Sequence record: PP712906.1
Reading direction: 5' to 3' (one strand)
Length of the DNA: 64,000 nucleotides
Shown: positions 1,444 through 42,373 of the stretch, piece after piece
Position numbering within the stretch: the first letter of the stretch is position 1
Layout: every line of letters begins with the position of its first letter
Made by a program: the position numbers and the translations under genes
Notes under the pieces: generated by a model
Told to the model about the DNA's origin: nothing
The model's database searches: none
What the model saw: only the letters and a program-made list of their open reading frames with translations

Positions 1444-2981
1444 TGTCAGGAACAAACATATTCACGCACGCGAGTGACGAGGCAAAATATGTTTACCTGC
1501 AACCGTTCACTTCTCCCGGTTCAGCTTTTGAAGCGGGAGGAGATGTTCAGAGTATTTTGGAGCAAATTGATCCAAGCGCATTGCTACCACTGCCGCCGTT
1601 ACCTTATGCAACTTCGACTGAGAACGGTGCAGTTGAGTACTCGACTCAAGCAGAAGCTAATGCACTTGATGATTTATTGACTGTTCTTACACCCGAAACA
1701 TTAGACGGTGTTGATCAGTTTGTATCACCAGCAACCGATACTCAGCTAGGTAACTTACTTGAATTACGTTCAAGTGATTTGACTCGAACATATGCATCAT
1801 CAGATGCCAGTCGTTTGCTTTCATATCGTCGTCTTGAAGAAATGATGACGACTAGAAATGCACTTGCAGATGACACAACCAATGATTCTCAGGGGTTTGC
1901 TCAGTTTGCAACTCTAGCTGAATCATTAGCATACAACCCATCACGCATAATCTCGCCTATGCGAACTTGGAACTTGATTAAAAAAGAAATTCCAAACCCA
2001 TGGGCGCAAGCAACGGAGACATCAACTGGTGTTGTTAGAACAGTAGCACCGAGTGATTCATTGAAATCAGATGCTTCTATCGCGATTAGTGTTAAAGGTT
2101 TGAATCATGTGTCAGCGACAACTTCAAAGCGAGGTGCGTTTAAGTTAACACAAAACAACTATGACCGCAATGCAAGTGATGCAAACGAATATGCAATAAC
2201 TCCCGGTACGATTGATAATTTATTGGCAACGAGTGATAAGGTTGGATTCTTTCAACTTCCTGCTACGTTCACAAATGACTCAACTCAAGCAACTAGTGCG
2301 GCATTAGGCTACGAACTTGCAAGTAAACTAGGTCCAGATGGTGGTACGATTACAGGCACGCTTCAATGTGACAACATTTACAGTAATATTGTCACGAGAC
2401 AAAAGCAATACAGCTATGGCGGCTCATATTACGTTAATGTAAAAGAGACACGAGAAGTATTCCCGAATAATCAACTTGATGCTAAAATCGGATTAGCAGG
2501 TCGACCAGTCGGAAGTATTTTCCATTGTACTGAAAATGTAGACCCGAATGTTGTATTTGGCGGCGTGTGGTATAGAATCAGAGCAGGTCAAACAATGATC
2601 GGTCAAGGTACGGGTGATGATGGCGTGCGTCGTCGTTACTTCTCAGCCGGAACATATGGTGATGATGATCGAGTTACATTGTACGAACGTCATTTGCCTA
2701 GTCACAGTCACAAAAGCTGGGGTGAAACATACTCAGGTTCGAAATCTTCATGTGTTAAGTACGGTACATACCGAAACCCGTACGGCGTGACATATTACTG
2801 TAAAGAATACAGTTATGTTGATTACTGGCGATTCGGTTATACGGGTAGTCGGAATAATATAGGCATGGGTTCTACTGACCGAGATAATTACATGTATTAC
2901 ACATCACCGGTAGGTGGCGGTCAAGCTCATGAAAACATGATGCCATTCTATCCCGTTTATATTTGGAGACGAGTTAAATGA
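1443..2981 (+). CDS. 12: Short tail fibre gp12, copy 1 (512 aa)
   Basis: N-terminus MSGTNIFTHASDEAKYV resembles T4 gp12. It has YATSTENG / AQATETSTGVV fibre repeats, a collar motif (PVGSIF...FGGVW) and an HxH tip motif (HLPSHSH). Confidence 0.85.
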   Translation: MSGTNIFTHASDEAKYVYLQPFTSPGSAFEAGGDVQSILEQIDPSALLPLPPLPYATSTENGAVEYSTQAEANALDDLLTVLTPETLDGVDQFVSPATDTQLGNLLELRSSDLTRTYASSDASRLLSYRRLEEMMTTRNALADDTTNDSQGFAQFATLAESLAYNPSRIISPMRTWNLIKKEIPNPWAQATETSTGVVRTVAPSDSLKSDASIAISVKGLNHVSATTSKRGAFKLTQNNYDRNASDANEYAITPGTIDNLLATSDKVGFFQLPATFTNDSTQATSAALGYELASKLGPDGGTITGTLQCDNIYSNIVTRQKQYSYGGSYYVNVKETREVFPNNQLDAKIGLAGRPVGSIFHCTENVDPNVVFGGVWYRIRAGQTMIGQGTGDDGVRRRYFSAGTYGDDDRVTLYERHLPSHSHKSWGETYSGSKSSCVKYGTYRNPYGVTYYCKEYSYVDYWRFGYTGSRNNIGMGSTDRDNYMYYTSPVGGGQAHENMMPFYPVYIWRRVK

Positions 2982-4399
2982 GTAAAGGAACTCAAATTTT
3001 CAATCACGTGATTGATGATGCGGGTACGGTTACAGTTGAAGTCGCTGGTACTGCCTTTGACGGGCAGACTGGCGGCAACGATGATCTTCAGACGTGTCTT
3101 GAATTGATTCAAGATCACGCTGTTCAGCCGTTACCTGATTACCCAGTCGCGTCAACGACTGTGGCTGGTATTACGAAATTAAGTGATGAAGCCGCTGTAA
3201 TTGATCCGCTAAACACAGATAGCGCGGTTACGCCAAGTTCGCTTGATTATTGGATGCAAAATCACGCAACCGCAACTGAATTGCAGTATGGTTTCGTAAA
3301 GCTGATAACCGAAAGCACAATCGACACAGTAGCACCGTCAGACCCTGTAGAAGCTGCACAAAAGCACGCATTCACGTTAAAAACGCTGAACTACGCTCTT
3401 AACACTCGATTTTACGCGACTGAATCTGATCCAGGTGCTGTGCGTCTCGCGACGAATGCGCAAGCAACGACAACAGGCACACTTTCAACTACTGTAGCAA
3501 TGACGCCGCAGCGAGTTAAAGAAATGCTTGACGTATGGGCAAACACAACTGCATCAGATGCATCCGAAACTACAAAGGGGTTGATTCGTCTAGCAAACGG
3601 GACTGAAGTCAACAGTACATTAGCGACTGAAGATAACTTGGCAATTTCGCCATATCGTTTTAACTTTAGAACAGCAACCACGACTCGTAAGGCAGGGTTT
3701 TATCTACCCGACGCTACAGTTGCCAACGCTCGTGCGTCGAACGAACATGCAGTTACAGTGGGCACATTGAATCTATTCAGTGCAAATAGTTCTCGTGTGG
3801 GTGTTGCTAAAATAGCAAACAATCTGACGACGAATGATCCGTTACAAGCTCTAAGTGCAGCAATGGGTTATAAGTTGAACAACGAGAAGATTGGCGATGC
3901 GGGTGGTACAGTCACGGGTACGCTGAAGATCAACAATGTTCAGTCAGTCGGCGGAACTCAGTTGATGACTAATGGTCTAATTGAATCACGAGCAATGCTT
4001 AATATGTATCCAGTCGGTTCAGTTTACATGTCGTTAGTATCAACATCACCTGCTACGCTTTTCGGCGGTACATGGGCTAGATTAGCACAAGGTCGTGTTC
4101 TTGTTTCAGAGGGTTCATATGGCGGGAGAACTTTTGCAGTTCGCCAAACTGGCGGCGAGTATGAAGTTAAGCTAACTGAAGCAACAATACCAGCTCATAA
4201 ACACGCTGGTTGGGGTGAACATTACGACGGTAACGGTATCGGGTTTGGCGTTGCGAAGCAATACGGGCGTAATAACCCAGGTTCTCGTAGAACAGACAGT
4301 GACAACTATCTATACTACACATCGCCGGTCGGCGGTAACCAAGCACACAACAACGTACAGCCATACTATACTGTTTACATGTGGGAAAGAACTGCATAA
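2978..4399 (+). CDS. 12: Short tail fibre gp12, copy 2 (473 aa)
   Basis: Same architecture as the upstream gene: ASTTVAGITKL / ATELQYGFVKL repeats, YPVGSVYMS...FGGTW collar, IPAHKH tip. ATGA overlap with copy 1. Confidence 0.85.
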   Translation: MSKGTQIFNHVIDDAGTVTVEVAGTAFDGQTGGNDDLQTCLELIQDHAVQPLPDYPVASTTVAGITKLSDEAAVIDPLNTDSAVTPSSLDYWMQNHATATELQYGFVKLITESTIDTVAPSDPVEAAQKHAFTLKTLNYALNTRFYATESDPGAVRLATNAQATTTGTLSTTVAMTPQRVKEMLDVWANTTASDASETTKGLIRLANGTEVNSTLATEDNLAISPYRFNFRTATTTRKAGFYLPDATVANARASNEHAVTVGTLNLFSANSSRVGVAKIANNLTTNDPLQALSAAMGYKLNNEKIGDAGGTVTGTLKINNVQSVGGTQLMTNGLIESRAMLNMYPVGSVYMSLVSTSPATLFGGTWARLAQGRVLVSEGSYGGRTFAVRQTGGEYEVKLTEATIPAHKHAGWGEHYDGNGIGFGVAKQYGRNNPGSRRTDSDNYLYYTSPVGGNQAHNNVQPYYTVYMWERTA

Positions 4400-4439: not shown

Positions 4440-4467
4440 GGGTGAGATTGATTTCTCACCCTTTTTT
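4440..4467 (+). terminator. Intrinsic terminator after gene 12 copy 2
   Basis: GGGTGAGA-TTGATT-TCTCACCC followed by TTTTTT. Confidence 0.85.
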
Positions 4468-4494
4468 GTATGAGCGAAGCGGTAGAAACGGATC

Positions 4495-4568
4495 GAGGCG
4501 GAAAAATTCCGTCTCATCTTAGTAGTATTAGTGGTTTTAGTGAAGTTAGAGATATTAGTATGATTAGT
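4495..4568 (+). repeat. 74-bp non-coding element, copy A (hairpin plus six TTAG at 9-bp period)
   Basis: Ungapped 63/74 match to the reverse complement of 32589-32662. TTAG starts at 4519, 4528, 4537, 4546, 4555 and 4564. Confidence 0.9.
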
Positions 4569-4580
4569 ATTAAATACTTG

Positions 4581-4609
4581 TTTAAATCCATGAATGTACC
4601 TGCTATTAT
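4581..4609 (+). promoter_or_regulatory. Putative sigma70-type promoter (GTTTA class) after repeat copy A
   Basis: (G)TTTAAA 4581-4586, 17-nt spacer, TATTAT 4604-4609. Confidence 0.5.
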
Positions 4610-4650
4610 AAACGCATAAAGACATCTCCCTCCTTGATCCTTTGTATTGC

Positions 4651-4658
4651 TATAAATA
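4651..4658 (+). promoter_or_regulatory. T4-type late promoter for wac-13-14-15
   Basis: Exact TATAAATA 40 nt before the wac ATG. Confidence 0.9.
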
Positions 4659-4697
4659 GTAGTAAGCTATGTTCATTTACAATACAAGGGAACAAAA

Positions 4698-6377
4698 ATG
4701 ACAATTCAAAAGCCTATCATTACAGAGCTTAGATATGTAAATGGTCAACCAGATCCTTCTCAACGTCCCGATCAAACTCGAATTAACTGGGCTAAGAATG
4801 GTGAAAGCATCAATGGTGCTTCTGGTGACACAGTTTCTGACGGTGTGTTAAACCGAGCAGGAGTACAGATCCAAGAAAACGTTCTGAACACACATTATAA
4901 TACAAAAGCACAGCAAACGACAATCGAGGAACTTGTCGATACCGTAAACGAACTGACGGGTGGTGGCGACGCAAACCTTGGTGCTCGTGTTTCTCAGACT
5001 GAATTCGATATTGATGTTCTTGAAAATCAAGTAGATGATCTTCAAGACAATGTTGGTGTACCGTCTACTATTGATGTTATGGCAACCGGTTTATATCGTC
5101 GCGCTGAAGACATCGAAGCTGATATTGGTGTTCGTAACCCAAATGACATCCCAAATGACGTTGAGAATAATGACACGATTCGTAAAGACTTGTATTTCAT
5201 CAAACGTCGTATTGGTAACGACCGTAACTATGATGTAAACGGGAATTCTTCTCCAAGTACAAACCCAACTGGTATGAAATATCAGATTGGAGATTTGTAT
5301 AACAAAACTGCAACGATCAATGCTGAAATTGGTGAAAACGCAATCCCGTTGACTATCAATGGTCGTCTGTATGAGTTGGAGCAGAACTCACAGGTCGGTG
5401 ATGTTGCTGAAATTCGTAGCGAAATCGGTGATTCTCAAGATGCAGACCCTGCTCGTACGATTTATTTGCGCCTTGACGACGCAGAAAGTGCGATTAGTGA
5501 CAACTCATCAGACATCAATTTGTTGCAACAAGAAATCGAGACTCCAACAACTGGTCTAATTGATCGTGTTTCGGCTAATGAAACTGCAATTTCAGACGGT
5601 CAGACGCAAATCACTGCTAATGCTCAGTCGATTACTGATATTACAACTGATCTCGGATCGTACTCAGTAGGTGACGTGTATGCAGGTACCGTTAAAGCTC
5701 GTCTATCGACGTTTAACGACGACATTTCTAATCTATGGAGCCGTTTAGGGGCTACTGACGCAGAGACCGGCACAGTGTCTTATAGAGTGGCAGGATTAGA
5801 GGCTAGTCTCGGGGATCGCGATAGCCCGGTTGAATTCACAGCTTGGTACACTATTCAAGAAAACCGTGGTCTGATTGATTCTGCTCAGTCTGAGGTTGAC
5901 GGTCTTTTGACTGTGGTTGGTCAGAGTGATACGGAAGTGGGTACTTTGCGTGCTCGTGTTCTTGAGCTTGAAGCCAATTTGGATTATGCAATGTTGACTT
6001 CAGACACGCCAAACACAGCATCATTGACAACAACACCGACAGACATGTTCAGTTTATTCAACGTTGAATCGGACGTAAGTGGTTTTACATACACTGGTGG
6101 CGTTTTGACCAGAACTGGTCTTGATATTAAGAAGCCGATCATGTTGAACTGGGTAGTTGTTTCTCCGACTACAACAACACTTACAATCAAGATTGATATT
6201 GTCAATCCGAGTGGTAGTGTTACTATCGAAAAAACACGTACGCTTCGTGCGGGATTGGTTACACCGATCAATATTGTTCACGTTGCTGACATTGAAGACA
6301 CTGGTGATATTACTATTCTTGCTAGTACTGCGGCAAACGTTACGATTGAACACGAATCGTTCTTCATGCAACTATAA
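4698..6377 (+). CDS. wac: Fibritin (neck whiskers), 559 aa
   Basis: N-terminus LRYVNGQPDPSQ...RINWAKNGESINGAS...GVLNRAG matches fibritin, followed by long segmented heptad coiled coils. Position between 12 and 13. Confidence 0.9.
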   Translation: MTIQKPIITELRYVNGQPDPSQRPDQTRINWAKNGESINGASGDTVSDGVLNRAGVQIQENVLNTHYNTKAQQTTIEELVDTVNELTGGGDANLGARVSQTEFDIDVLENQVDDLQDNVGVPSTIDVMATGLYRRAEDIEADIGVRNPNDIPNDVENNDTIRKDLYFIKRRIGNDRNYDVNGNSSPSTNPTGMKYQIGDLYNKTATINAEIGENAIPLTINGRLYELEQNSQVGDVAEIRSEIGDSQDADPARTIYLRLDDAESAISDNSSDINLLQQEIETPTTGLIDRVSANETAISDGQTQITANAQSITDITTDLGSYSVGDVYAGTVKARLSTFNDDISNLWSRLGATDAETGTVSYRVAGLEASLGDRDSPVEFTAWYTIQENRGLIDSAQSEVDGLLTVVGQSDTEVGTLRARVLELEANLDYAMLTSDTPNTASLTTTPTDMFSLFNVESDVSGFTYTGGVLTRTGLDIKKPIMLNWVVVSPTTTTLTIKIDIVNPSGSVTIEKTRTLRAGLVTPINIVHVADIEDTGDITILASTAANVTIEHESFFMQL

Positions 6378-10116: not shown

Positions 10117-10227
10117 ATGCTTATTTTAACGCTGTGTGCAGCTCGTACGCAGCGTTTGTCTATTTTATTGAGTGTTTGTACTCATATTATTGAAAAGACG
10201 CTCACAGAGCGTTTTAGAGAGGAACGT

Positions 10228-14650: not shown

Positions 14651-15151
14651 ATGGCACTTAATGTAGACAACATTAAAAGAGCTTTCAGCAACGGTGATTT
14701 CGCTCGTCCTAACTTGTTCGAAGTTGAGATTCCGTATCTGGGACAGAACTTTAAATTTCAATGTCGCGCCTCTTCAATGCCGCCGGGCAGTGTTGAGAAA
14801 GTGGAAGTTTCATATCAAAACCGTAAGTACAACATTGCGGGCGACCGTACGTTCGACGATTGGAACGTTACTGTGTACAACGATGAAACTCACGACATTC
14901 GCAAAGCAATTATGGCATGGCAAGCTCGTGCTGTAGGCTTAGGCAAAGACATTTCAGGTGAAACGCCTGATCAGTACAAACGTACTGGTACAATCACACA
15001 GTTAGACCGTAACGGTGATCCGACTACTTCGGCAACTGTATACGGAATTTTCCCGACTGTGGTGGGTGAAGTTGCGCTTGACTGGGATTCAAACAACGAA
15101 ATCGAAACGTTTGAAGTAACATTCAGCCTTGATTACTTCACATTAGATTAA
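14651..15151 (+). CDS. 19: Tail tube protein gp19
   Basis: GDFARPNLFEVEIP...AGDRTFDDWNVTVYND...LDWDSNNEIETFEVTF. Confidence 0.97.
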   Translation: MALNVDNIKRAFSNGDFARPNLFEVEIPYLGQNFKFQCRASSMPPGSVEKVEVSYQNRKYNIAGDRTFDDWNVTVYNDETHDIRKAIMAWQARAVGLGKDISGETPDQYKRTGTITQLDRNGDPTTSATVYGIFPTVVGEVALDWDSNNEIETFEVTFSLDYFTLD

Positions 15152-18085: not shown

Positions 18086-18928
18086 ATGCAAATCAAAGAG
18101 CAACTACTTGAAGCGGTATCAAAAGACGATACTAAAATCACTACTGCTTTGGATGGCATTTTTGAATCAGTTGAACTTTCCGAAGATGTTCGTAATAAGT
18201 TCAGCACTGTTTTCGAAAGTGTAATCAAGACTAAAGCCGTTGAGCTTGCTGAAGCACATATTGCTGAAGCTGCTGAAAAGGCTGAAGCAGTAATCAACGA
18301 ACACAAAGAAGAGCTAAATGAAGCTGCTGAAAAATACGGCGAACATCTAGCAGAGCAAATGGCGAACAAACTTGATTCATACCTAGATCACGTTGTTGAA
18401 GCTTGGATGGCTGAAAACAAACTAGCGGTTGAAAATGGTCTGAAAGTTTCTATGTTCGACGGCTTGATGGAAGGCATGAAAAATGTATTCATCGAGAACA
18501 ACGTTCACTGCCCAGACGAGAAGATCGACATGATCGAAGCTCTTGAAGAAAACATTCAAGATCTTGAAAGCCGTCTAGACGCAGTTATCGTCGAAAACCG
18601 CCAACACAAAGAATACGCTAACTACGTAGAGAAAAACATCATCATCGAGCGCGTGACTGCTGGTATGGCTGAATCTCAAAAAGAGAAAGTTGCTGACCTA
18701 GCCGAGTCAATCCGCTTCGACGAGAACTTTGAAGACAATCTAAATAGTGTTATCAAGTTCGCTTCTGGTATCAAGCTTGCTGAAAAAGAAGATATGGAAG
18801 ACGACAAGAAGCCGGCTGAGAAAAAAGACGGTGAAGACGACGCTGAGAAGAAAGACGACAAAGAAATGAAAGAATCCGCAGTACCATCTATGGCTGCATA
18901 CTTGAAAGCTGCTCGTACTACTCGATAA
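18086..18928 (+). CDS. 22: Prohead scaffold (core) protein gp22
   Basis: FSTVFESVIK...YLDHVVEAWMAENKLAVENGLK...F..NN. Helical and acidic. ATG 10 nt after AAGGA. Confidence 0.93.
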   Translation: MQIKEQLLEAVSKDDTKITTALDGIFESVELSEDVRNKFSTVFESVIKTKAVELAEAHIAEAAEKAEAVINEHKEELNEAAEKYGEHLAEQMANKLDSYLDHVVEAWMAENKLAVENGLKVSMFDGLMEGMKNVFIENNVHCPDEKIDMIEALEENIQDLESRLDAVIVENRQHKEYANYVEKNIIIERVTAGMAESQKEKVADLAESIRFDENFEDNLNSVIKFASGIKLAEKEDMEDDKKPAEKKDGEDDAEKKDDKEMKESAVPSMAAYLKAARTTR

Positions 18929-31714: not shown

Positions 31715-32128
31715 CTACATACCTATTGCTAGTTTGAATAGAGCAGACGCTTTACCACCATCGAAAACTTTACCTGTAGCCTTTAGAGCGCCCATTAGTT
31801 TGCCCATATCACGCATAGAATCTGCACCAGTTTCTAGCACGAAGTTAGAAACAAACGTGTCTAGCTCTGAATCAGATATTTTTGCTGGTAGCAAAGACTC
31901 AAGAACAGCGTTTTCAGCGTTCAGAATGTCAACATGGTCGCCCTGTGCGTGTTCAAGTGCGAGTTTGTTGTTGTCGATTGCGCTTGAGATCACTTTGATG
32001 CAAGATTCATCATCGTGTTTTTGACGACGGTCAAGTTCACCCATAATGACACCCAAGACAGACGCAACTGCGTTGTTGCGGTCTTTACGAGCTTGTAGGC
32101 GTGTTGCTTTGATTGTTTCGATGATCAT
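31715..32128 (-). CDS. YqeY/GatB-domain protein (137 aa)
   Basis: ARKDRN...ENAVLESLLPAKISDSEL...GADSMRDMGKLMGALK...DGGKAS. Confidence 0.85.
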   Translation of the reverse strand: MIIETIKATRLQARKDRNNAVASVLGVIMGELDRRQKHDDESCIKVISSAIDNNKLALEHAQGDHVDILNAENAVLESLLPAKISDSELDTFVSNFVLETGADSMRDMGKLMGALKATGKVFDGGKASALFKLAIGM

Positions 32129-32538
32129 ACTATACCACTCTCAATTTTTCTATTATCAATAATGTGTTTAATTGTGAAGCCCATTTGGATAATGCCTTTC
32201 AAAGCTTCTTCGATGAAAGATAACACATCTTTCATGTGTTGAAAACGTGCAATCGCTAATTGAAGAGCCTCATCACCAGCGAGTGCGTATTTCATTTCAC
32301 TTTTTTCAACGATAAAATCACAAACTTCATCGTCATGCTTGCCGCTATAAAAGAGCCAGCGGTCTTTTCTCACTGCTTCCATTTTCATTTCAGCTTTAAT
32401 AAGAAGCTGTCTTGCATCGGCTCTATATGCAAGCCACTTTGCATGAAGTACTGGGATTCGAATGGCTGCTGTTTCTAGTGCAGTCGTATCGATCTTAACG
32501 TCTTCATGGTATTCTGCTTTTAAATCTTGTAACTTCAT
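32125..32538 (-). CDS. uvsY: Recombination mediator UvsY (137 aa)
   Basis: DVKIDTTAL...IPVLHAKW...RWLFYSGK...EKSEMKYALAGD...GFTIKHII. Start at MKLQ. Confidence 0.93.
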   Translation of the reverse strand: MKLQDLKAEYHEDVKIDTTALETAAIRIPVLHAKWLAYRADARQLLIKAEMKMEAVRKDRWLFYSGKHDDEVCDFIVEKSEMKYALAGDEALQLAIARFQHMKDVLSFIEEALKGIIQMGFTIKHIIDNRKIESGIV

Positions 32539-32558: not shown

Positions 32559-32587
32559 AGTATACATATCAAACGGGTTTTTGTAAA
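32559..32587 (-). promoter_or_regulatory. sigma70-type promoter (GTTTA class) for uvsY
   Basis: Minus strand (G)TTTACA-17 nt-TATACT, like the T4 early consensus GTTTAC. Confidence 0.75.
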
Positions 32588-32588
32588 C

Positions 32589-32662
32589 ACGAATCTCACT
32601 AATACTTCTAATATCACTAAAAGCACTAATTCTACTAAGATGATGCGGAATTTTTCCGCCTC
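32589..32662 (-). repeat. 74-bp non-coding element, copy B
   Basis: Reverse complement matches 4495-4568 at 63/74 with no gaps. Five TTAG plus one TTCG at 9-bp period. Confidence 0.9.
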
Positions 32663-32682
32663 TTACCTTTTGCTTCGCGTAT

Positions 32683-32705
32683 AAAAAAAGCCCCGAAGGG
32701 CTTTC
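32683..32705 (-). terminator. Terminator after gene 35
   Basis: Minus strand AAAGCCC-TTCG-GGGCTTTTTTT. Confidence 0.9.
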
Positions 32706-35390
32706 TTATTGCATTGCGTAATCAATCGCAGTGATTGTGTCTTCATAGAAACAAGCAACTTTGACTTCAGACACGATAGGCAAAGCCCACATTGTCTGGC
32801 TTTCAGTTACAGATCCCTCATCACGATAGCGCAAGAACATCTTGGCGTGGTCTGATTTCCATCTGTAGAAGCTAACTGCGTTCGGTGTGTATGAACCAAC
32901 GCCTTTTGCTGTTAAGCTACTTGGATCATCTTCAGGGTTGTAAACGCCGAAGTAGTTTTCATATTTGTCTTGGAACGCTTGATGTTGAGCATCTGTCCAC
33001 GTATGCGGTAGAATGAATGCTTGCATCAGAATCCATTTTCCGTTAGCGGCTGGGAAGTTATCAACACGATCAATCGTTGCAAATGTTGAAGCATCTGTCC
33101 CGTCAGCTAATTTCAATGTGCTAAACGCATCAGCGCCATCTTTGACTCGACAACTAAAATGTAAATAACCCGCGTCTTTATCAATTGAGTTTACCCACAA
33201 TGACAAGAAGTATGGTCTTGTCGGGTCAATATTGATTTCAGACATTTCAATCATTGATTGTGTGCCTGTAGAGCGTGTGAAACACTTCTCGCCATTCGAA
33301 AGAACATAATTCCCCCAATGAACGTTATCTGTTTCTCTGACTGGCATATTGACATTCTCGTATAGATTCGAGTTCGAGTTGTATGCATTAAACCAGCTTG
33401 TGTCATTCACTACGTTGCCTGATATTGGTGAATTTACAATATCTTGAGCAGCTAGACCATTTATATTCGAAATCAAATGAGGAGTTCCGCTAGGAACTGC
33501 AAACCCGCCTTTGTAAACGAGTGCATAATCGAAGTACTCTTGGTCAAGATCTGACCAAACGCCAAATGTAACTGCACCTGCTGGGACTTGAACAAAAAAC
33601 TCTTGAGTTTCGAATAATTCCGATGACCCGAAGAAAATATTCTGCCTTGCAACTTCAGTGTTCACTGCATTGTACATTCTCAAGTTACACGACTTCGTAC
33701 CGCCACCGATAGCAGTAGTTCTATCAATACACGCTCTTACTTTGTAGATCAGGTATTGACCTTCAACAACACCGAAGTCAGATAGATTGTATCGAGTATC
33801 AACGGGTACCGTATCACGTGCTAGAAGCGCGTTTCCGAATCCTGCTGAACCGATTCCATCTTTGTCTTCGAATGCAGTATCAACAATGCTGTCGCCGTCT
33901 GACGGGTGGTCGAATATACATCGATCATATACAATACCTAAATCAGCACGACCGAATGCTGCATAACTGTAGCTGTATTGGCTGAAGTACGAACTTCCTC
34001 TATACTCGACGGGATTGTATTGATTAATTGCAGCATCAACCGCCACATCGCCGTACATCGAACCGTTCGATACGATGATGAATATTTCATTCGTCAGGTT
34101 ATTCAACGCATTGACGAAGTTTCCGCGTTCAGTTGAACTACTCAAAAGATACTTGCTGCTTGTTTTCACTGTCAAATCATCATTCATAATCAGAAGACGA
34201 ATTTGATATGCTTGTTTAGTTTCGGGCGTGAATAGACTAACATCATTCAAATAACATGATGCTAGATTCGAACTACCGTTTGCAACACCAGTAGCAACTA
34301 GACGATAATTGTTATTCGAGAACTCGCGAATGTGTCTAGCCGCAAGTTCATATTCACCTACTCGTGATCCTACAGGCGCATAGATCCACAATTCAGTTAC
34401 ATTGACTGTTTGTCCGGGACCTGGCGTAGAGCCGCCCGACGCAGCTTGCGCACCGATTGCATAATACCAGTTTGAGTGATTCACTGACCCATCAGCAAGT
34501 GAGTTTGAGCCTGTGTTGTACTCAATACCACCCCAATACTGAACGTCAGATTGGATTGAAATCGCTTCGTAGCCACGAACCCCACCAGTACGAGCATCAT
34601 AATCCCCTGTGTAGTTTTTAATCAACGGAGCATCGGAAATCATGAAGTTAGTCAACCAACGTTTTCCAGTTGGTAGTTTAGCAACATCTGACGTATACCC
34701 ACAATACCAGTACATATTACTTGTTGACAGAGTACTAGGCGTCGTGAAACGAGCATAATGACGCTTCCATAGAATCCCATCAACTATGCGTTCATTGCCT
34801 GCTGACTCAAACACATCACCCGGGATGTGACCTAGTGTATATGGGTTTGATGCACCGTCATACCAGCGAGAGTGAAACAGAGCTGCGGTATCATGATCAG
34901 TATCGACTTCATATCCAACCCAACATGACATTGTGTATGTTCGATTCGGGAGAAGTCGAGTTTGTGGAACTGAAAACACAATTTGATCGAAGATCGCCGC
35001 AGTTGGCTGCTCGACAACGTATTTTGATGACCCTGGGTTTTCTTTTTCAACAACGACCCATGAGCCTGTTTTTGTCGTTTGTTCAGTAACAAATTGACCT
35101 CCAGCCAAGTTACCGTTTGTCAGATACTGACCTACGCCTTTCGCTGCGAAGTTGTTACTTTGTTTCCAAATATTCGTAATGCCGACTTCAGGGTAATGCA
35201 GCTTGAATTGGAATTTACCGTCCTCACGACGAAATTCTTCAAGTGAGTTTAACGCACTGAATTTGGCTTCAATGTCGGGATCCGTCCCGACACTTCTAGC
35301 CTCAGCATCGGAGGTGAAAAATACACCTCCTGTAGAATCATGGCGAAAGATTAGTAACCAATCGCCTTCACGTTTAAGTCTTTCGTACAT
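32706..35390 (-). CDS. 35: Enlarged long-tail-fibre hinge protein gp35 (894 aa) with fibrinogen-like, CBM-like and GG/ILEI-like domains
   Basis: Directly downstream of 34. WLLIFRHD...FKLHYP...WKQSNN and GYEAI...WGGI...DG...WYYAIG motifs. Central YRLVATG...FIIVSNG...YSYAAFG. Confidence 0.75.
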   Translation of the reverse strand: MYERLKREGDWLLIFRHDSTGGVFFTSDAEARSVGTDPDIEAKFSALNSLEEFRREDGKFQFKLHYPEVGITNIWKQSNNFAAKGVGQYLTNGNLAGGQFVTEQTTKTGSWVVVEKENPGSSKYVVEQPTAAIFDQIVFSVPQTRLLPNRTYTMSCWVGYEVDTDHDTAALFHSRWYDGASNPYTLGHIPGDVFESAGNERIVDGILWKRHYARFTTPSTLSTSNMYWYCGYTSDVAKLPTGKRWLTNFMISDAPLIKNYTGDYDARTGGVRGYEAISIQSDVQYWGGIEYNTGSNSLADGSVNHSNWYYAIGAQAASGGSTPGPGQTVNVTELWIYAPVGSRVGEYELAARHIREFSNNNYRLVATGVANGSSNLASCYLNDVSLFTPETKQAYQIRLLIMNDDLTVKTSSKYLLSSSTERGNFVNALNNLTNEIFIIVSNGSMYGDVAVDAAINQYNPVEYRGSSYFSQYSYSYAAFGRADLGIVYDRCIFDHPSDGDSIVDTAFEDKDGIGSAGFGNALLARDTVPVDTRYNLSDFGVVEGQYLIYKVRACIDRTTAIGGGTKSCNLRMYNAVNTEVARQNIFFGSSELFETQEFFVQVPAGAVTFGVWSDLDQEYFDYALVYKGGFAVPSGTPHLISNINGLAAQDIVNSPISGNVVNDTSWFNAYNSNSNLYENVNMPVRETDNVHWGNYVLSNGEKCFTRSTGTQSMIEMSEINIDPTRPYFLSLWVNSIDKDAGYLHFSCRVKDGADAFSTLKLADGTDASTFATIDRVDNFPAANGKWILMQAFILPHTWTDAQHQAFQDKYENYFGVYNPEDDPSSLTAKGVGSYTPNAVSFYRWKSDHAKMFLRYRDEGSVTESQTMWALPIVSEVKVACFYEDTITAIDYAMQ

Positions 35391-40819: not shown

Positions 40820-41411
40820 CGTATTTCGCGTCTATTGCGCTGTCAAAGCGCATATGGGTGGCAAGTACGACATCTCCAAGTACAAACTCGGGATGAAAAC
40901 ACCTAGATCTGCGTTCGAGAAGCGTTCAGATAAGGTGTTTTTTGAACGGCTAGCCAAACGGCTAACACTGAACGATTGCTATCAGTTGCTTGTTAGCAAC
41001 TTAGCAGCTAACCCGAACGCTATCTCATACGAGATAGCGGGTGCTGACGCTCATGAATTCTGGTTGAAACATACGGGATTTTTGGAAATTTACAGTCAAC
41101 ACTACAAAAACGAGTTACTTTCGATTTTTACTCTTATAAATAAAGAGAATAAAAAATTCAAAGATTTGTTTAGAGGCGAAGGGCATCCAGTTATAATGCA
41201 ACTCGTATTACGAAACACTATCTCGATTGAGACGTTCGTAATTCTGAATAGACTTTTGAACTTCGTCCCTGTAATCGACAAGACATACAGTGATGACATT
41301 TTCTGGCACGAGTTCAAGACGCGAGCTTTAGCATACGATAAGTTGCTGAAAATCGACGAAGAACTTGCGAAGGAATTGTTTATTCAAGTAAAAAATCAAA
41401 GTAAAATATAA
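40761..41411 (+). CDS. 59: Helicase loader gp59
   Basis: NGYSVFRVYCAVKAHMGGKYDISKY...FEKRSDKVFFERL...ISIETFVILN. Confidence 0.92.
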   Translation: MKRLLEVDLVLPRTWVNGYSVFRVYCAVKAHMGGKYDISKYKLGMKTPRSAFEKRSDKVFFERLAKRLTLNDCYQLLVSNLAANPNAISYEIAGADAHEFWLKHTGFLEIYSQHYKNELLSIFTLINKENKKFKDLFRGEGHPVIMQLVLRNTISIETFVILNRLLNFVPVIDKTYSDDIFWHEFKTRALAYDKLLKIDEELAKELFIQVKNQSKI

Positions 41412-41461
41412 AACACAATACGATACAATATCATACTATACAATACAAGGTAATATACAAT

Positions 41462-42373
41462 ATGTCTATGTTCAAACGCAAATCTCCAGCACAACTTCAA
41501 GAAAAACTAGAAAAAATGTCAAGCAAAAAGTCATTTGACAACGCTGACGAGTGGAAACTAACCACTGATAAACTAGGTAACGGTTCTGCGGTGATTCGCT
41601 TCCTTCCTGCAAAAGGCGAAGACGACCTACCATTCGTAAAAATCTTCACTCACGGTTTCAAAGAAAACGGCAACTGGTTCATCGAAAACTGTCCATCGAC
41701 TATCGATCTTCCTTGTCCATGCTGTGCAGCTAACGGCGAGCTTTGGAAAACTGAGAACGAAGACAATCAAAACATTGCGCGTAAACGCAAGCGTACTCTT
41801 TCATACTGGGCTAACATCGTTGTAATCAAAGATGACGCAGCGCCAGAAAATGAAGGCAAAGTTTTCAAATACCGCTTCGGTAAGAAAATTCTTGACAAGA
41901 TCACTCAAGCTGCTCAAGCAGACGAAGATCTAGGTGTACCGGGCATGGACGTGACTTGTGTATTCGACGGTGCTAACTTCAGCTTGAAAGCTAAGAAAGT
42001 ATCTGGGTTCCCTAACTACGACGACTCTAAATTCGGCCCAAGCACTGAGCTATACGGCGGTGACGAAGCTAAACTTAAAGAAGTTTGGGATGCAATGCAC
42101 GATCTGAACGCAATCATTGCGCCTTCAGCTTTCAAATCAGAAGCTGAACTACAGAAACGCTTCTTGCAAGTAACTGGTGCGGCTCAGCCAAAAGCATCGG
42201 CTGCTCAGAATCTTGAAGCGCAACTGAACACTTCTGCACCTGCTCAAGCAAATGCTCCAAAAGCGGCTGCTAAGCCAGCGGCATCAGTAGACGTTGATCC
42301 AGAGCCAGTAACTGACTCTGTTGACGACGAGCTAGACGCACTGCTTGCTGACCTAGAGCTAGGCGACGATTAA
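41462..42373 (+). CDS. 32: ssDNA-binding protein gp32
   Basis: MFKRKS, EWKL..DK.GNGSAVIRFLP, HGFKENGNWFIENCPST..CPCC, acidic tail DDELDALLADL. Confidence 0.97.
   Translation: MSMFKRKSPAQLQEKLEKMSSKKSFDNADEWKLTTDKLGNGSAVIRFLPAKGEDDLPFVKIFTHGFKENGNWFIENCPSTIDLPCPCCAANGELWKTENEDNQNIARKRKRTLSYWANIVVIKDDAAPENEGKVFKYRFGKKILDKITQAAQADEDLGVPGMDVTCVFDGANFSLKAKKVSGFPNYDDSKFGPSTELYGGDEAKLKEVWDAMHDLNAIIAPSAFKSEAELQKRFLQVTGAAQPKASAAQNLEAQLNTSAPAQANAPKAAAKPAASVDVDPEPVTDSVDDELDALLADLELGDD

What the first reader, a model, noticed from the sequence alone, without database searches (positions are those of the whole stretch)
4472..4609. A 74-bp non-coding element repeated 28 kb away: hairpin plus an exact 9-bp-period TTAG array between a terminator and a promoter
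Seen: 4495-4568 aligns without gaps to the reverse complement of 32589-32662 at 63/74 identity. Both copies have the same layout: tail-fibre gene terminator, GCGAAGC, a GAGGCGGAA-AAA-TTCCG(T/C) hairpin, TTAG repeated every 9 nt (4519, 4528, 4537, 4546, 4555, 4564), then a GTTTA-17-TA..T promoter. The mismatches fall almost entirely between the TTAG units (only one TTAG becomes TTCG), which suggests selection on a protein-binding array. Copy A's promoter points into wac, a late gene that already has its own TATAAATA, so transcription of wac does not explain it. Inference: an iteron-type replication origin, a packaging or recombination hot spot, or an operator array for a phage protein. No feature above accounts for it.
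Basis: partly seen in the sequence, partly recalled or inferred. Interest (0 to 1): 0.82.

Follow-up and report, generated by a model that had tools for sequence, protein, structure and literature searches.

The report
Six-copy hairpin-plus-TTAG-array phage element
The two look-alike stretches are real and belong to a family of six conserved, evenly spread non-coding elements found only in KVP40-like Vibrio phages; their function is untested, and the sequence favours a single-stranded-DNA site, perhaps a replication start site.

Summary
In detail: 63/74 identity, TTAG at the stated positions, and no such array in shuffled sequence. The window is a KVP40-like Vibrio phage. The two copies belong to a family of six per genome, at the same six loci in KVP40, VH7D and, where checked, nt-1, and found only in this phage clade.

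Each copy has four parts:
- a GCGAAGC-type DNA mini-hairpin
- a 6-9 bp hairpin with compensatory changes
- five or six TTAGTRRWA units in strict 9-nt phase
- usually a terminator upstream and a sigma-70-type early promoter 0-27 nt downstream, as in the published PeSL cassettes

All six copies point the same way as their neighbouring genes and are evenly spread around the genome (P about 0.005). They exchange sequence with each other. Three features are strand-specific: the mini-hairpin, the G-T wobble in the stem, and almost no C in the spacers (1.4% against 25% G). The array is among the least stable DNA in the window. Copy B sits at the uvsY promoter, where T4 has oriF.

Best guess (about 0.3): a single-stranded-DNA helicase/primase loading or origin module. 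Rivals are an operator array for the early promoters and an RNA leader. Nothing is proven, and I found no published description.

The parts
2978..4399 (+). Gene 12-2 (short tail fibre), the gene upstream of copy A
   Evidence: ORF list; KVP40 annotation of the orthologous stretch
4440..4467 (+). Intrinsic terminator after gene 12-2 (8-bp stem, T run)
   Evidence: Terminator scan; conserved in nt-1, VH7D, D482 and F86
4474..4480 (+). GCGAAGC mini-hairpin motif (GCGNAGC class), the 5' arm of the element
   Evidence: a motif of this class (GCGNAGC or CCGAAAGG) is present in 20 of 22 aligned copies; motif class described in PMC13037366
4495..4515 (+). Main hairpin of copy A (up to 9 bp including one G-T, AAA loop)
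4519..4567 (+). Array of six TTAG units at 9-nt period in copy A. It lies in the longest C-free run of the window (4519-4576)
4581..4609 (+). Sigma-70-type early-promoter-like site with a TG extension, pointing into wac
   Evidence: the TGnTAnnAT pattern is kept in five divergent phages
4651..4658 (+). Late-promoter-like octamer of wac, inside a 60-nt leader that is nearly invariant in five phages
   Evidence: the function is assigned from my own knowledge of T4-type late promoters
4698..6377 (+). wac (fibritin), the gene downstream of copy A
32706..35390 (-). Gene 35 (long-tail-fibre hinge), the gene upstream of copy B
32683..32704 (-). Intrinsic terminator after gene 35 (GC stem, TTCG loop, T run)
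   Evidence: Read directly; the scan tool did not call it
32672..32678 (-). GCGAAGC mini-hairpin motif of copy B
32642..32662 (-). Main hairpin of copy B (the CA form of the 3' arm)
32590..32638 (-). Array of copy B: five TTAG units and a sixth that reads TTCG, same 9-nt phase
   Evidence: the TTCG is also kept in KVP40 and nt-1 at this locus
32559..32587 (-). Sigma-70-type early-promoter-like site (10 of 12 matches) that starts 2 nt after the array and points into uvsY
32125..32538 (-). uvsY (recombination mediator), the gene downstream of copy B

Best explanation
The element is one of six copies of a cis-acting DNA module specific to KVP40-like phages. It sits inside terminator/early-promoter (PeSL-like) cassettes.

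What is shown:
- The sense (non-template) strand carries a GCGNAGC-type DNA mini-hairpin and a 6-9 bp hairpin that keeps its pairing through compensatory changes.
- Next comes a C-free, unstructured, easily melted tract of five or six TTAGTRRWA units in strict 9-nt phase.
- All copies point the same way as the local genes and are evenly spread around the genome.

What I infer: the module works as single-stranded DNA. When the array melts, the two hairpins form on the top strand and mark a single-strand/duplex junction. Melting could be helped by negative supercoiling behind the adjacent early promoter, or by a protein that binds the phased units. The phased tract then serves as a landing platform for an oligomeric protein and for the phage helicase/primase. 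A helicase loaded on that strand moves 5' to 3', so the fork would run in the same direction as transcription. This is the polarity known for T4 oriF and oriG.

In short: an origin-like or primosome-loading site of a type that does not use MotA. The binding protein, the melting step and any replication start are all untested.
For: - Family and conservation: there are six copies, at the same six loci in KVP40 and VH7D and at the four loci checked in nt-1. Only Vibrio phages of this clade carry it (51 records).
- Orientation and spacing: 6 of 6 copies are co-oriented with their flanking genes. The gaps between copies are 26-54 kb, and six random points are this even with P = 0.003-0.006.
- Hairpin: the inner stem is always paired. 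Two pairs change GC to CG in three copies. One pair is GC in 10 copies and GU in 10, which works only on the sense strand.
- Mini-hairpin: GCGAAGC is the usual form. Variants are GCGCAGC, GCGTCAGC and a CCGAAAGG core. All fit the GCGNAGC/GCGNNAGC class. That class is very stable as DNA and is reported at phage G4, St-1 and alpha3 priming sites and at RSF1010 ssiA (PMC13037366).
- Strand asymmetry: the spacers hold 7 C against 123 G out of 500 positions.
- Melting: the arrays are among the 0.4-0.9% least stable 50-bp windows and are unstructured when folded as a single strand.
- Position: copy B lies directly upstream of uvsY, where T4 has oriF. T4 gp59 needs a single-stranded gap on the lagging-strand arm to load the helicase (PMC3016281).
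- Minor point: the trinucleotides I recall as T4 primase start signals occur in repeat 2 of 19 of 22 copies (own knowledge, weak).
Against: - No replication data exist.
- GC skew shows no consistent step at three copies.
- The defining parts of T4 oriF are missing. There is no MotA-type promoter, and the array lies upstream of the promoter, not downstream.
- No initiator gene lies next to any copy.
- Two KVP40 copies (c2, c3) have no upstream terminator, so they must be transcribed through.
- At c3 a gene starts 1 nt after the array, with its ribosome-binding site inside a repeat. This shows the element tolerates, and may use, an RNA role.
- The mini-hairpin is missing in 2 of 22 copies.
- The even spacing and the uvsY position were noticed after the fact.
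Confidence: 0.3

Rival explanations
1. Operator or enhancer array on double-stranded DNA. A small oligomeric phage (or host) protein binds the phased TTAG units side by side, wrapping around the helix because 9 bp is less than one turn. It then switches the adjacent early promoters on or off together.
For: Five of six KVP40 copies have a sigma-70-like promoter 0-27 nt downstream. At c1 and c6 the -35 hexamer touches the last repeat. TTAG and its phase are invariant while the spacers drift. nt-1 lost exactly one 9-nt unit at two loci, which keeps the phase. KVP40 encodes AsiA, and no early or middle control system is described for it.
Against: The distance from array to -35 differs between loci (about 1, 2, 13, 24 and 27 nt), with no common helical phase. 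Copy c3 has no promoter at all in four phages (KVP40, VH7D, nt-1, 6E35-1b). A duplex-binding protein would not be expected to forbid C but allow G at all five variable positions of every unit. It also does not explain the mini-hairpin or the compensatory changes in the stem.
Confidence: 0.25
2. RNA-level element. In read-through or polycistronic transcripts, the hairpin plus an unstructured C-free tract acts as a processing, stability or protein-binding leader. This resembles the structured-plus-unstructured operator of T4 gene 32, or a ribosome standby site.
For: All copies are in the sense orientation. KVP40 c2 and c3 follow an ORF with no terminator, so they are transcribed. At c3 the Shine-Dalgarno sequence lies in a repeat and the start codon comes 1 nt after the array, in four phages and with two different genes. 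G-U pairs are allowed in the stem. The centroid RNA fold shows only the hairpin, and the array is open. A C-free, G-containing tract cannot fold on itself.
Against: Four of six copies sit just after an intrinsic terminator. Five of six have a promoter between the array and the gene, so the main mRNAs lack the element. No Rfam family matches. A 2-bp GAA-loop stem is weak as RNA, while the same letters are unusually stable as DNA. Even genome spacing has no RNA rationale.
Confidence: 0.2
3. A passively maintained recombination module. It would be a long-homology version of the PeSL cassettes that spreads and homogenises by gene conversion and helps to swap neighbouring genes, with no other role.
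For: Some copies resemble copies at other loci more than their own counterpart in a related phage. VH7D c2 matches VH7D c4 at 72/74 but KVP40 c2 at 67/74. KVP40 c6 matches window c6 at only 66/74, while c5 is 74/74 between the same two phages. A two-letter dimorphism (TC/CA) flips between related phages at the same locus. The gene downstream of c3 differs between KVP40 and nt-1. Upstream ORFs end inside the 5' arm of the element at c2 and c3. PeSL-mediated shuffling is published (PMC2839356, PMC4122927).
Against: Neutral repeats would not keep TTAG, the 9-nt phase, the stem pairing and the C-avoidance across genera while the spacers change. Copy number (5-6) and the loci are stable in about 50 genomes. 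Direct repeats 26-54 kb apart that flank essential genes should be selected against unless they are useful.
Confidence: 0.1

Closest known systems
PeSL cassettes (promoter-early stem-loop) of T4-type phages, including nt-1/KVP40 (Arbiol 2010, PMC2839356; Comeau 2014, PMC4122927)
   Same: An intergenic stem-loop/terminator, then an AT-rich stretch, then a sigma-70-like early promoter with N17 spacing, then the next gene. There is sequence exchange between copies, and a gene replacement at one copy (c3).
   Different: PeSLs are numerous, cluster in the hyperplastic regions, and share only the stem-loop and promoter consensus. This family has six copies spread evenly, three of them between conserved core genes in the late-gene regions (3/1, 12/wac, 35/uvsY). 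It carries about 95 nt of extra conserved sequence (mini-hairpin, second hairpin, phased array) that is not part of the PeSL definition. Two copies lack the terminator and one lacks the promoter. I could not check whether the authors' figures include these loci, because the figures and supplements are not held.
T4 oriF (uvsY) and oriG R-loop origins (review PMC3016281)
   Same: Copy B is at the uvsY promoter. There is an easily unwound AT-rich tract next to a promoter, and the polarity is co-directional with transcription. Several origins per genome lie partly inside late-gene regions.
   Different: T4 uses a MotA-dependent middle promoter with the unwinding element downstream of it, and the T4 origins share no sequence motif. 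Here the promoter is sigma-70-type, the tract is upstream of it, and all six copies share a long motif.
Single-strand initiation signals with DNA mini-hairpins (phage G4/St-1/alpha3 complementary-strand origins, RSF1010 ssiA; PMC13037366)
   Same: A GCGNAGC/GCGNNAGC-type mini-hairpin plus a larger hairpin on one specific strand, with strand-specific structure.
   Different: Those signals act on single-stranded genomes or plasmid strands and have no phased short-repeat array. No priming has been shown here.
Iteron-type origins, including the evenly spaced 12-nt repeats reported at T4 oriE (PMC3016281)
   Same: Direct repeats in fixed phase next to a promoter.
   Different: Iterons are longer and are bound by an initiator encoded nearby. 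Here only 4-5 of the 9 positions are fixed, no initiator gene is adjacent, and there are six loci. The only evenly spaced repeats I found near T4 gene 5 lie inside the gp5 coding region at a 24-nt period, so they may be coding repeats.
T4 gene 32 translational operator (own knowledge)
   Same: A structured 5' element followed by an unstructured repeat-bearing tract that can run into a ribosome-binding site, as at copy c3.
   Different: In both window copies a promoter separates the tract from the gene. The phage's own gene 32 leader (window 41411-41462) uses a different repeat.

Membership tests
PeSL (promoter-early stem-loop cassette) | Intergenic stem-loop/terminator just upstream (nt-1 type: A3-4 G3 - loop - C3 T3-4) | tested here: met
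   Copy A 4440-4467. Copy B 32683-32704 is of the A3G...C T7 type. Also present at c1 and c4, but absent at KVP40 c2 and c3.
PeSL (promoter-early stem-loop cassette) | Sigma-70-like early promoter (TTGYVH-N17-TAWWAT) followed by SD and ATG | tested here: inconclusive
   Copy A is TTTAAA-17-TATTAT and copy B is TTTACA-17-TATACT. The spacing and -10 fit, but the third base of the -35 does not. In copy B the SD and ATG follow at once. In copy A wac starts 89 nt later, after a late-promoter-like site. c3 has no promoter.
PeSL (promoter-early stem-loop cassette) | Many copies, concentrated in hyperplastic regions, next to indels | tested here: not met
   Exactly six loci in KVP40 and VH7D, evenly spaced. 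c4, c5 and c6 lie between conserved core genes in the late-gene regions. Only c3 shows a gene replacement.
T4-type R-loop origin (oriF/oriG) | MotA-dependent middle promoter (TGCTT box near -30) | tested here: not met
   No such box was seen upstream of the -10 sites of either copy. The promoters have -35-like hexamers at 17 nt.
T4-type R-loop origin (oriF/oriG) | AT-rich unwinding element downstream of the promoter | tested here: not met
   The low-stability tract exists but lies upstream of the promoter in all five copies that have a promoter.
T4-type R-loop origin (oriF/oriG) | Persistent R-loop and replication start | not testable with these tools
   Needs wet-lab mapping. GC skew gave no signal, which is not decisive for T4-type genomes.
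Iteron-type origin | Repeats bound by an initiator encoded next to them; one locus per replicon | tested here: not met
   The neighbours are tail-fibre genes, wac, uvsY, nrdH, gene 1 and small ORFs. There are six loci.
Single-strand initiation signal with mini-hairpin | Strand-specific hairpins that include a GCGNAGC/GCGNNAGC mini-hairpin | tested here: met
   A motif of this class (GCGNAGC or CCGAAAGG) is on the sense strand in 20 of 22 copies. The stem G-T pair works only on that strand.
Single-strand initiation signal with mini-hairpin | Recognition by a primase, and primer synthesis | not testable with these tools
   No data.
Any Rfam RNA family | Covariance-model match | tested here: not met
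   The best hits had E > 1 and lay far below the gathering scores.
Protein-coding gene (some records annotate an ORF here) | The same reading frame is open, with a start codon, in all copies | tested here: not met
   Copy B has no ORF spanning the element. Read by eye, the ORFs annotated at c4 of nt-1 and c5 of other phages use different frames. The conserved positions do not follow codon periodicity.

The most novel reading that the evidence does not exclude
KVP40-like jumbo vibriophages carry a previously unrecognised, sequence-defined class of replication start or primosome-loading sites. There would be six evenly spaced modules, each made of a DNA mini-hairpin, a second hairpin and a 9-nt-phased C-free array read as single-stranded DNA by an oligomeric phage protein. 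This would be a MotA-independent counterpart of the T4 origins, which share no motif.
Probability: 0.25. Interest if true: 0.8.

Novelty: new variant of a known kind. Interest (0 to 1): 0.6.

Why it matters
Origins of replication are mapped in T4 itself but not in its many distant relatives, and the T4 origins share no sequence motif that could be searched for. A conserved, strand-specific element present in six copies, one of them at the uvsY promoter, gives a concrete set of sites to test with simple descriptive mapping. If it proves instead to be an operator array or an RNA leader, it would still be the first defined early-control element in a phage group for which the KVP40 genome paper, as I recall its abstract (the paper is not held), reported no early- or middle-mode transcription features. 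It also shows that several database records annotate spurious small ORFs across the element.

Tried and rejected
- Coding ORF across the element: rejected, because the frames differ between copies and copy B has no start codon.
- Rfam: no match.
- Promoter inside the element, or a MotA-type box: none seen by eye.
- More copies in the window: only a 3-mismatch chance hit at 15043-15059.
- Loose scan of viral contigs for four phased TTAG: unspecific, and its 120 loci are unusable.
- Tighter scans of viral contigs: found only KVP40 and VH7D, plus one chance hit in a coding region.
- Scan of bacterial genomes: in the roughly 80 of 107 rows shown, only chance matches in unrelated genomes and no Vibrio host copy.
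- Metagenome scan: four true relatives and eight unrelated hits.
- Analogous element upstream of uvsY in the Aeromonas phage AS-sw: no intergenic space there; in T4 only a 76-bp gap, whose sequence I did not read.
- GC-skew step at the copies: none consistent.
- T4 oriE 'iterons' as a comparator: the only evenly spaced repeats near gene 5 lie inside the gp5 coding sequence.
- The idea that the array G's are targets of the phage DpdA2 deazaguanine transglycosylase: left as speculation, because DpdA2 also modifies plasmids in E. coli.
- The KVP40 genome paper could not be read because it is not held.
- Large loci were not available to scripts, so some counts were made through the alignment tools.

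Full report
Yes. Window 4495-4568 matches the reverse complement of 32589-32662 at 63 of 74 positions without gaps. TTAG starts at 4519, 4528, 4537, 4546, 4555 and 4564. Copy B has five TTAG and one TTCG in the same phase. Three TTAG at 9-nt spacing occur seven times in the window, all inside the two arrays, and never in 100 shuffles. The 17-nt hairpin core is identical in both copies. Mismatches fall 1/24 inside TTAG against 8/26 in the spacers (p = 0.024). The scan tool finds the copy A terminator and a sigma-70-like site downstream of each array; the copy B terminator I read directly.

**2. What is the genome, and how many copies are there?**
- The window is 100% identical to Vibrio phage TCU-VP03-AIR1 and 96% identical to KVP40.
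- Copy A lies between gene 12-2 and wac. Copy B lies between gene 35 and uvsY.
- A sensitive search with the copy A region found matches in 51 records, all KVP40-like Vibrio phages, usually six places per record.
- I fetched KVP40 in five pieces and found exactly six loci:
  - c1: before nrdH-24-55
  - c2: after ORF 0135
  - c3: between ORFs 0251 and 0252
  - c4: between genes 3 and 1
  - c5: between 12-2 and wac (copy A)
  - c6: between 35 and uvsY (copy B)
- VH7D has the same six loci. nt-1, which belongs to a different genus, has at least c3 to c6.
- Outside this clade I found nothing. Viral contigs gave only KVP40 and VH7D. Metagenomes gave four relatives. Bacterial genomes gave only chance hits. 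The Aeromonas phage AS-sw has no intergenic space upstream of uvsY, and T4 has only a 76-bp gap whose sequence I did not read.

**3. Anatomy, from 22 aligned copies**
From 5' to 3' on the sense strand:
- A GCGAAGC motif, with variants GCGCAGC and GCGTCAGC. At c1 a terminator with a CCGAAAGG core takes its place.
- 10-17 variable nucleotides.
- A hairpin whose inner six pairs are always formed. Two pairs switch from GC to CG in three copies. One pair is GC in ten copies and GU in ten.
- The linker ATC.
- Five or six units with consensus TTAGTRRWA. TTAG is almost invariant and position 6 is always a purine. The other spacer positions vary.

The spacers hold 7 C against 123 G in 500 positions. 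nt-1 lacks exactly one 9-nt unit at c5 and at c3, which keeps the phase.

Copy A lies in the longest C-free run of the window. The arrays rank in the 0.4-0.9% least stable 50-bp windows. Folded as a single strand, the hairpin dominates and the array stays open.

**4. Context**
- Four KVP40 copies follow an intrinsic terminator. c2 and c3 follow an ORF directly, and that ORF ends inside the 5' arm of the element.
- Five copies are followed by a sigma-70-like promoter at about 1, 2, 13, 24 and 27 nt.
- The wac promoter keeps a TGnTAnnAT pattern in five divergent phages.
- At c3 a gene starts 1 nt after the array, with its ribosome-binding site inside a repeat. This holds in four phages (KVP40, VH7D, nt-1, 6E35-1b), although nt-1 has a different gene there.
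- All six copies are co-oriented with their neighbouring genes.
- The gaps between copies on the KVP40 circle are 26-54 kb. Six random points are this even with P about 0.003-0.006. I noticed this after the fact.

**5. Evolution**
- Vertical descent is mixed with exchange between copies. VH7D c2 is closest to VH7D c4 (72/74), not to KVP40 c2 (67/74).
- KVP40 c6 and window c6 share only 66/74, while c5 is identical between the same two phages.
- The GC-to-CG stem variant sits at c4 in KVP40 but at c2 and c4 in VH7D. A two-letter dimorphism after the stem flips between orthologous copies (the same locus in different phages).

**6. What is known**
- The terminator / AT-rich / early-promoter layout matches the PeSL cassettes described for T4-type phages, including nt-1/KVP40 (PMC2839356, PMC4122927). 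The PeSL definition contains no second hairpin, mini-hairpin or phased array. PeSLs are many and are clustered in variable regions.
- T4 origins oriF (uvsY) and oriG consist of a MotA promoter plus a downstream unwinding element and share no motif. oriE has evenly spaced 12-nt repeats of unknown role (PMC3016281).
- GCGNAGC and GCGNNAGC are unusually stable DNA mini-hairpins, reported at phage G4, St-1 and alpha3 priming sites and at RSF1010 ssiA (PMC13037366).
- No Rfam family matches.
- I found no paper that describes this element. The KVP40 genome paper is not held.

**7. Interpretation**
Three independent features point to the sense strand acting as a single strand: the DNA-type mini-hairpin, the G-T-tolerant stem, and the ban on C but not on G at variable positions. 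Together with the low duplex stability, the polarity, the even spacing and the uvsY position, I rank an origin-like or primosome-loading single-stranded-DNA module first, at about 0.3.
- An operator array for the early promoters (0.25) explains the phase and the promoter neighbourhood. It does not explain the strand asymmetry, the variable distances or c3.
- An RNA leader (0.2) explains c2, c3 and the sense-strand features. It does not explain the upstream terminators or the intervening promoters.
- A purely recombinational module (0.1) does not explain the selective pattern.
- The remaining probability is for something not considered. None of this is tested.

Noticed in passing
window 41411-41462: The leader between genes 59 and 32 carries ACAAT-type short repeats (the tandem-repeat finder gives 6.8 copies) and is the least stable DNA of the window. 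It looks like this phage's version of the unstructured gene 32 translational operator.
   Followed up: partly
L271:317-484 (T4 record OZ209023.1, 78316-78483): The only evenly spaced repeats near T4 gene 5, where oriE is placed, have a 24-nt period and lie inside the C-terminal coding part of gp5. The oriE 'iterons' of the literature may therefore be coding repeats.
   Followed up: partly
window 4470-4619 (+); L142:184-387; L143:223-396; L147:5097-5237: Several GenBank records annotate small 'hypothetical protein' ORFs across the element (TCU-VP03-AIR1, F86, D482, nt-1 ORF204). The frames differ between copies, so these ORFs are probably spurious.
   Followed up: yes
L138:2618-2680, L135:365-430, L150:447-490, L151:446-480: At c2 and c3 the upstream ORFs run into the 5' arm of the element. 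Two unrelated proteins therefore end in the same ...KSEA-type tail, which is encoded by the GCGAAGC region.
   Followed up: partly
window 4620-4697: The roughly 60 nt around the wac late-promoter-like octamer and leader are almost invariant in five phages whose genomes differ by about 20%. This is far more conserved than the early-promoter region beside it.
   Followed up: no
whole genomes of nt-1 and VH7D (literature): These phages carry only a few hundred or fewer 7-deazaguanine modifications per million nucleotides, inserted by DpdA2, whose target motif is not reported (PMC6884629, PMC10516641). Whether the array G's are targets is open.
   Followed up: no
window 18798-18861 and 10154-10193: Two further tandem repeats, with periods of 27 nt and 22 nt, were listed by the repeat finder. 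I did not examine them.
   Followed up: no
L150:548 onward compared with L006:29733 onward: The gene that follows element c3 differs between nt-1 (a non-lipoprotein) and KVP40, VH7D and 6E35-1b (a lipoprotein with a signal peptide and a cysteine). The replacement junction is exactly at the end of the array.
   Followed up: partly
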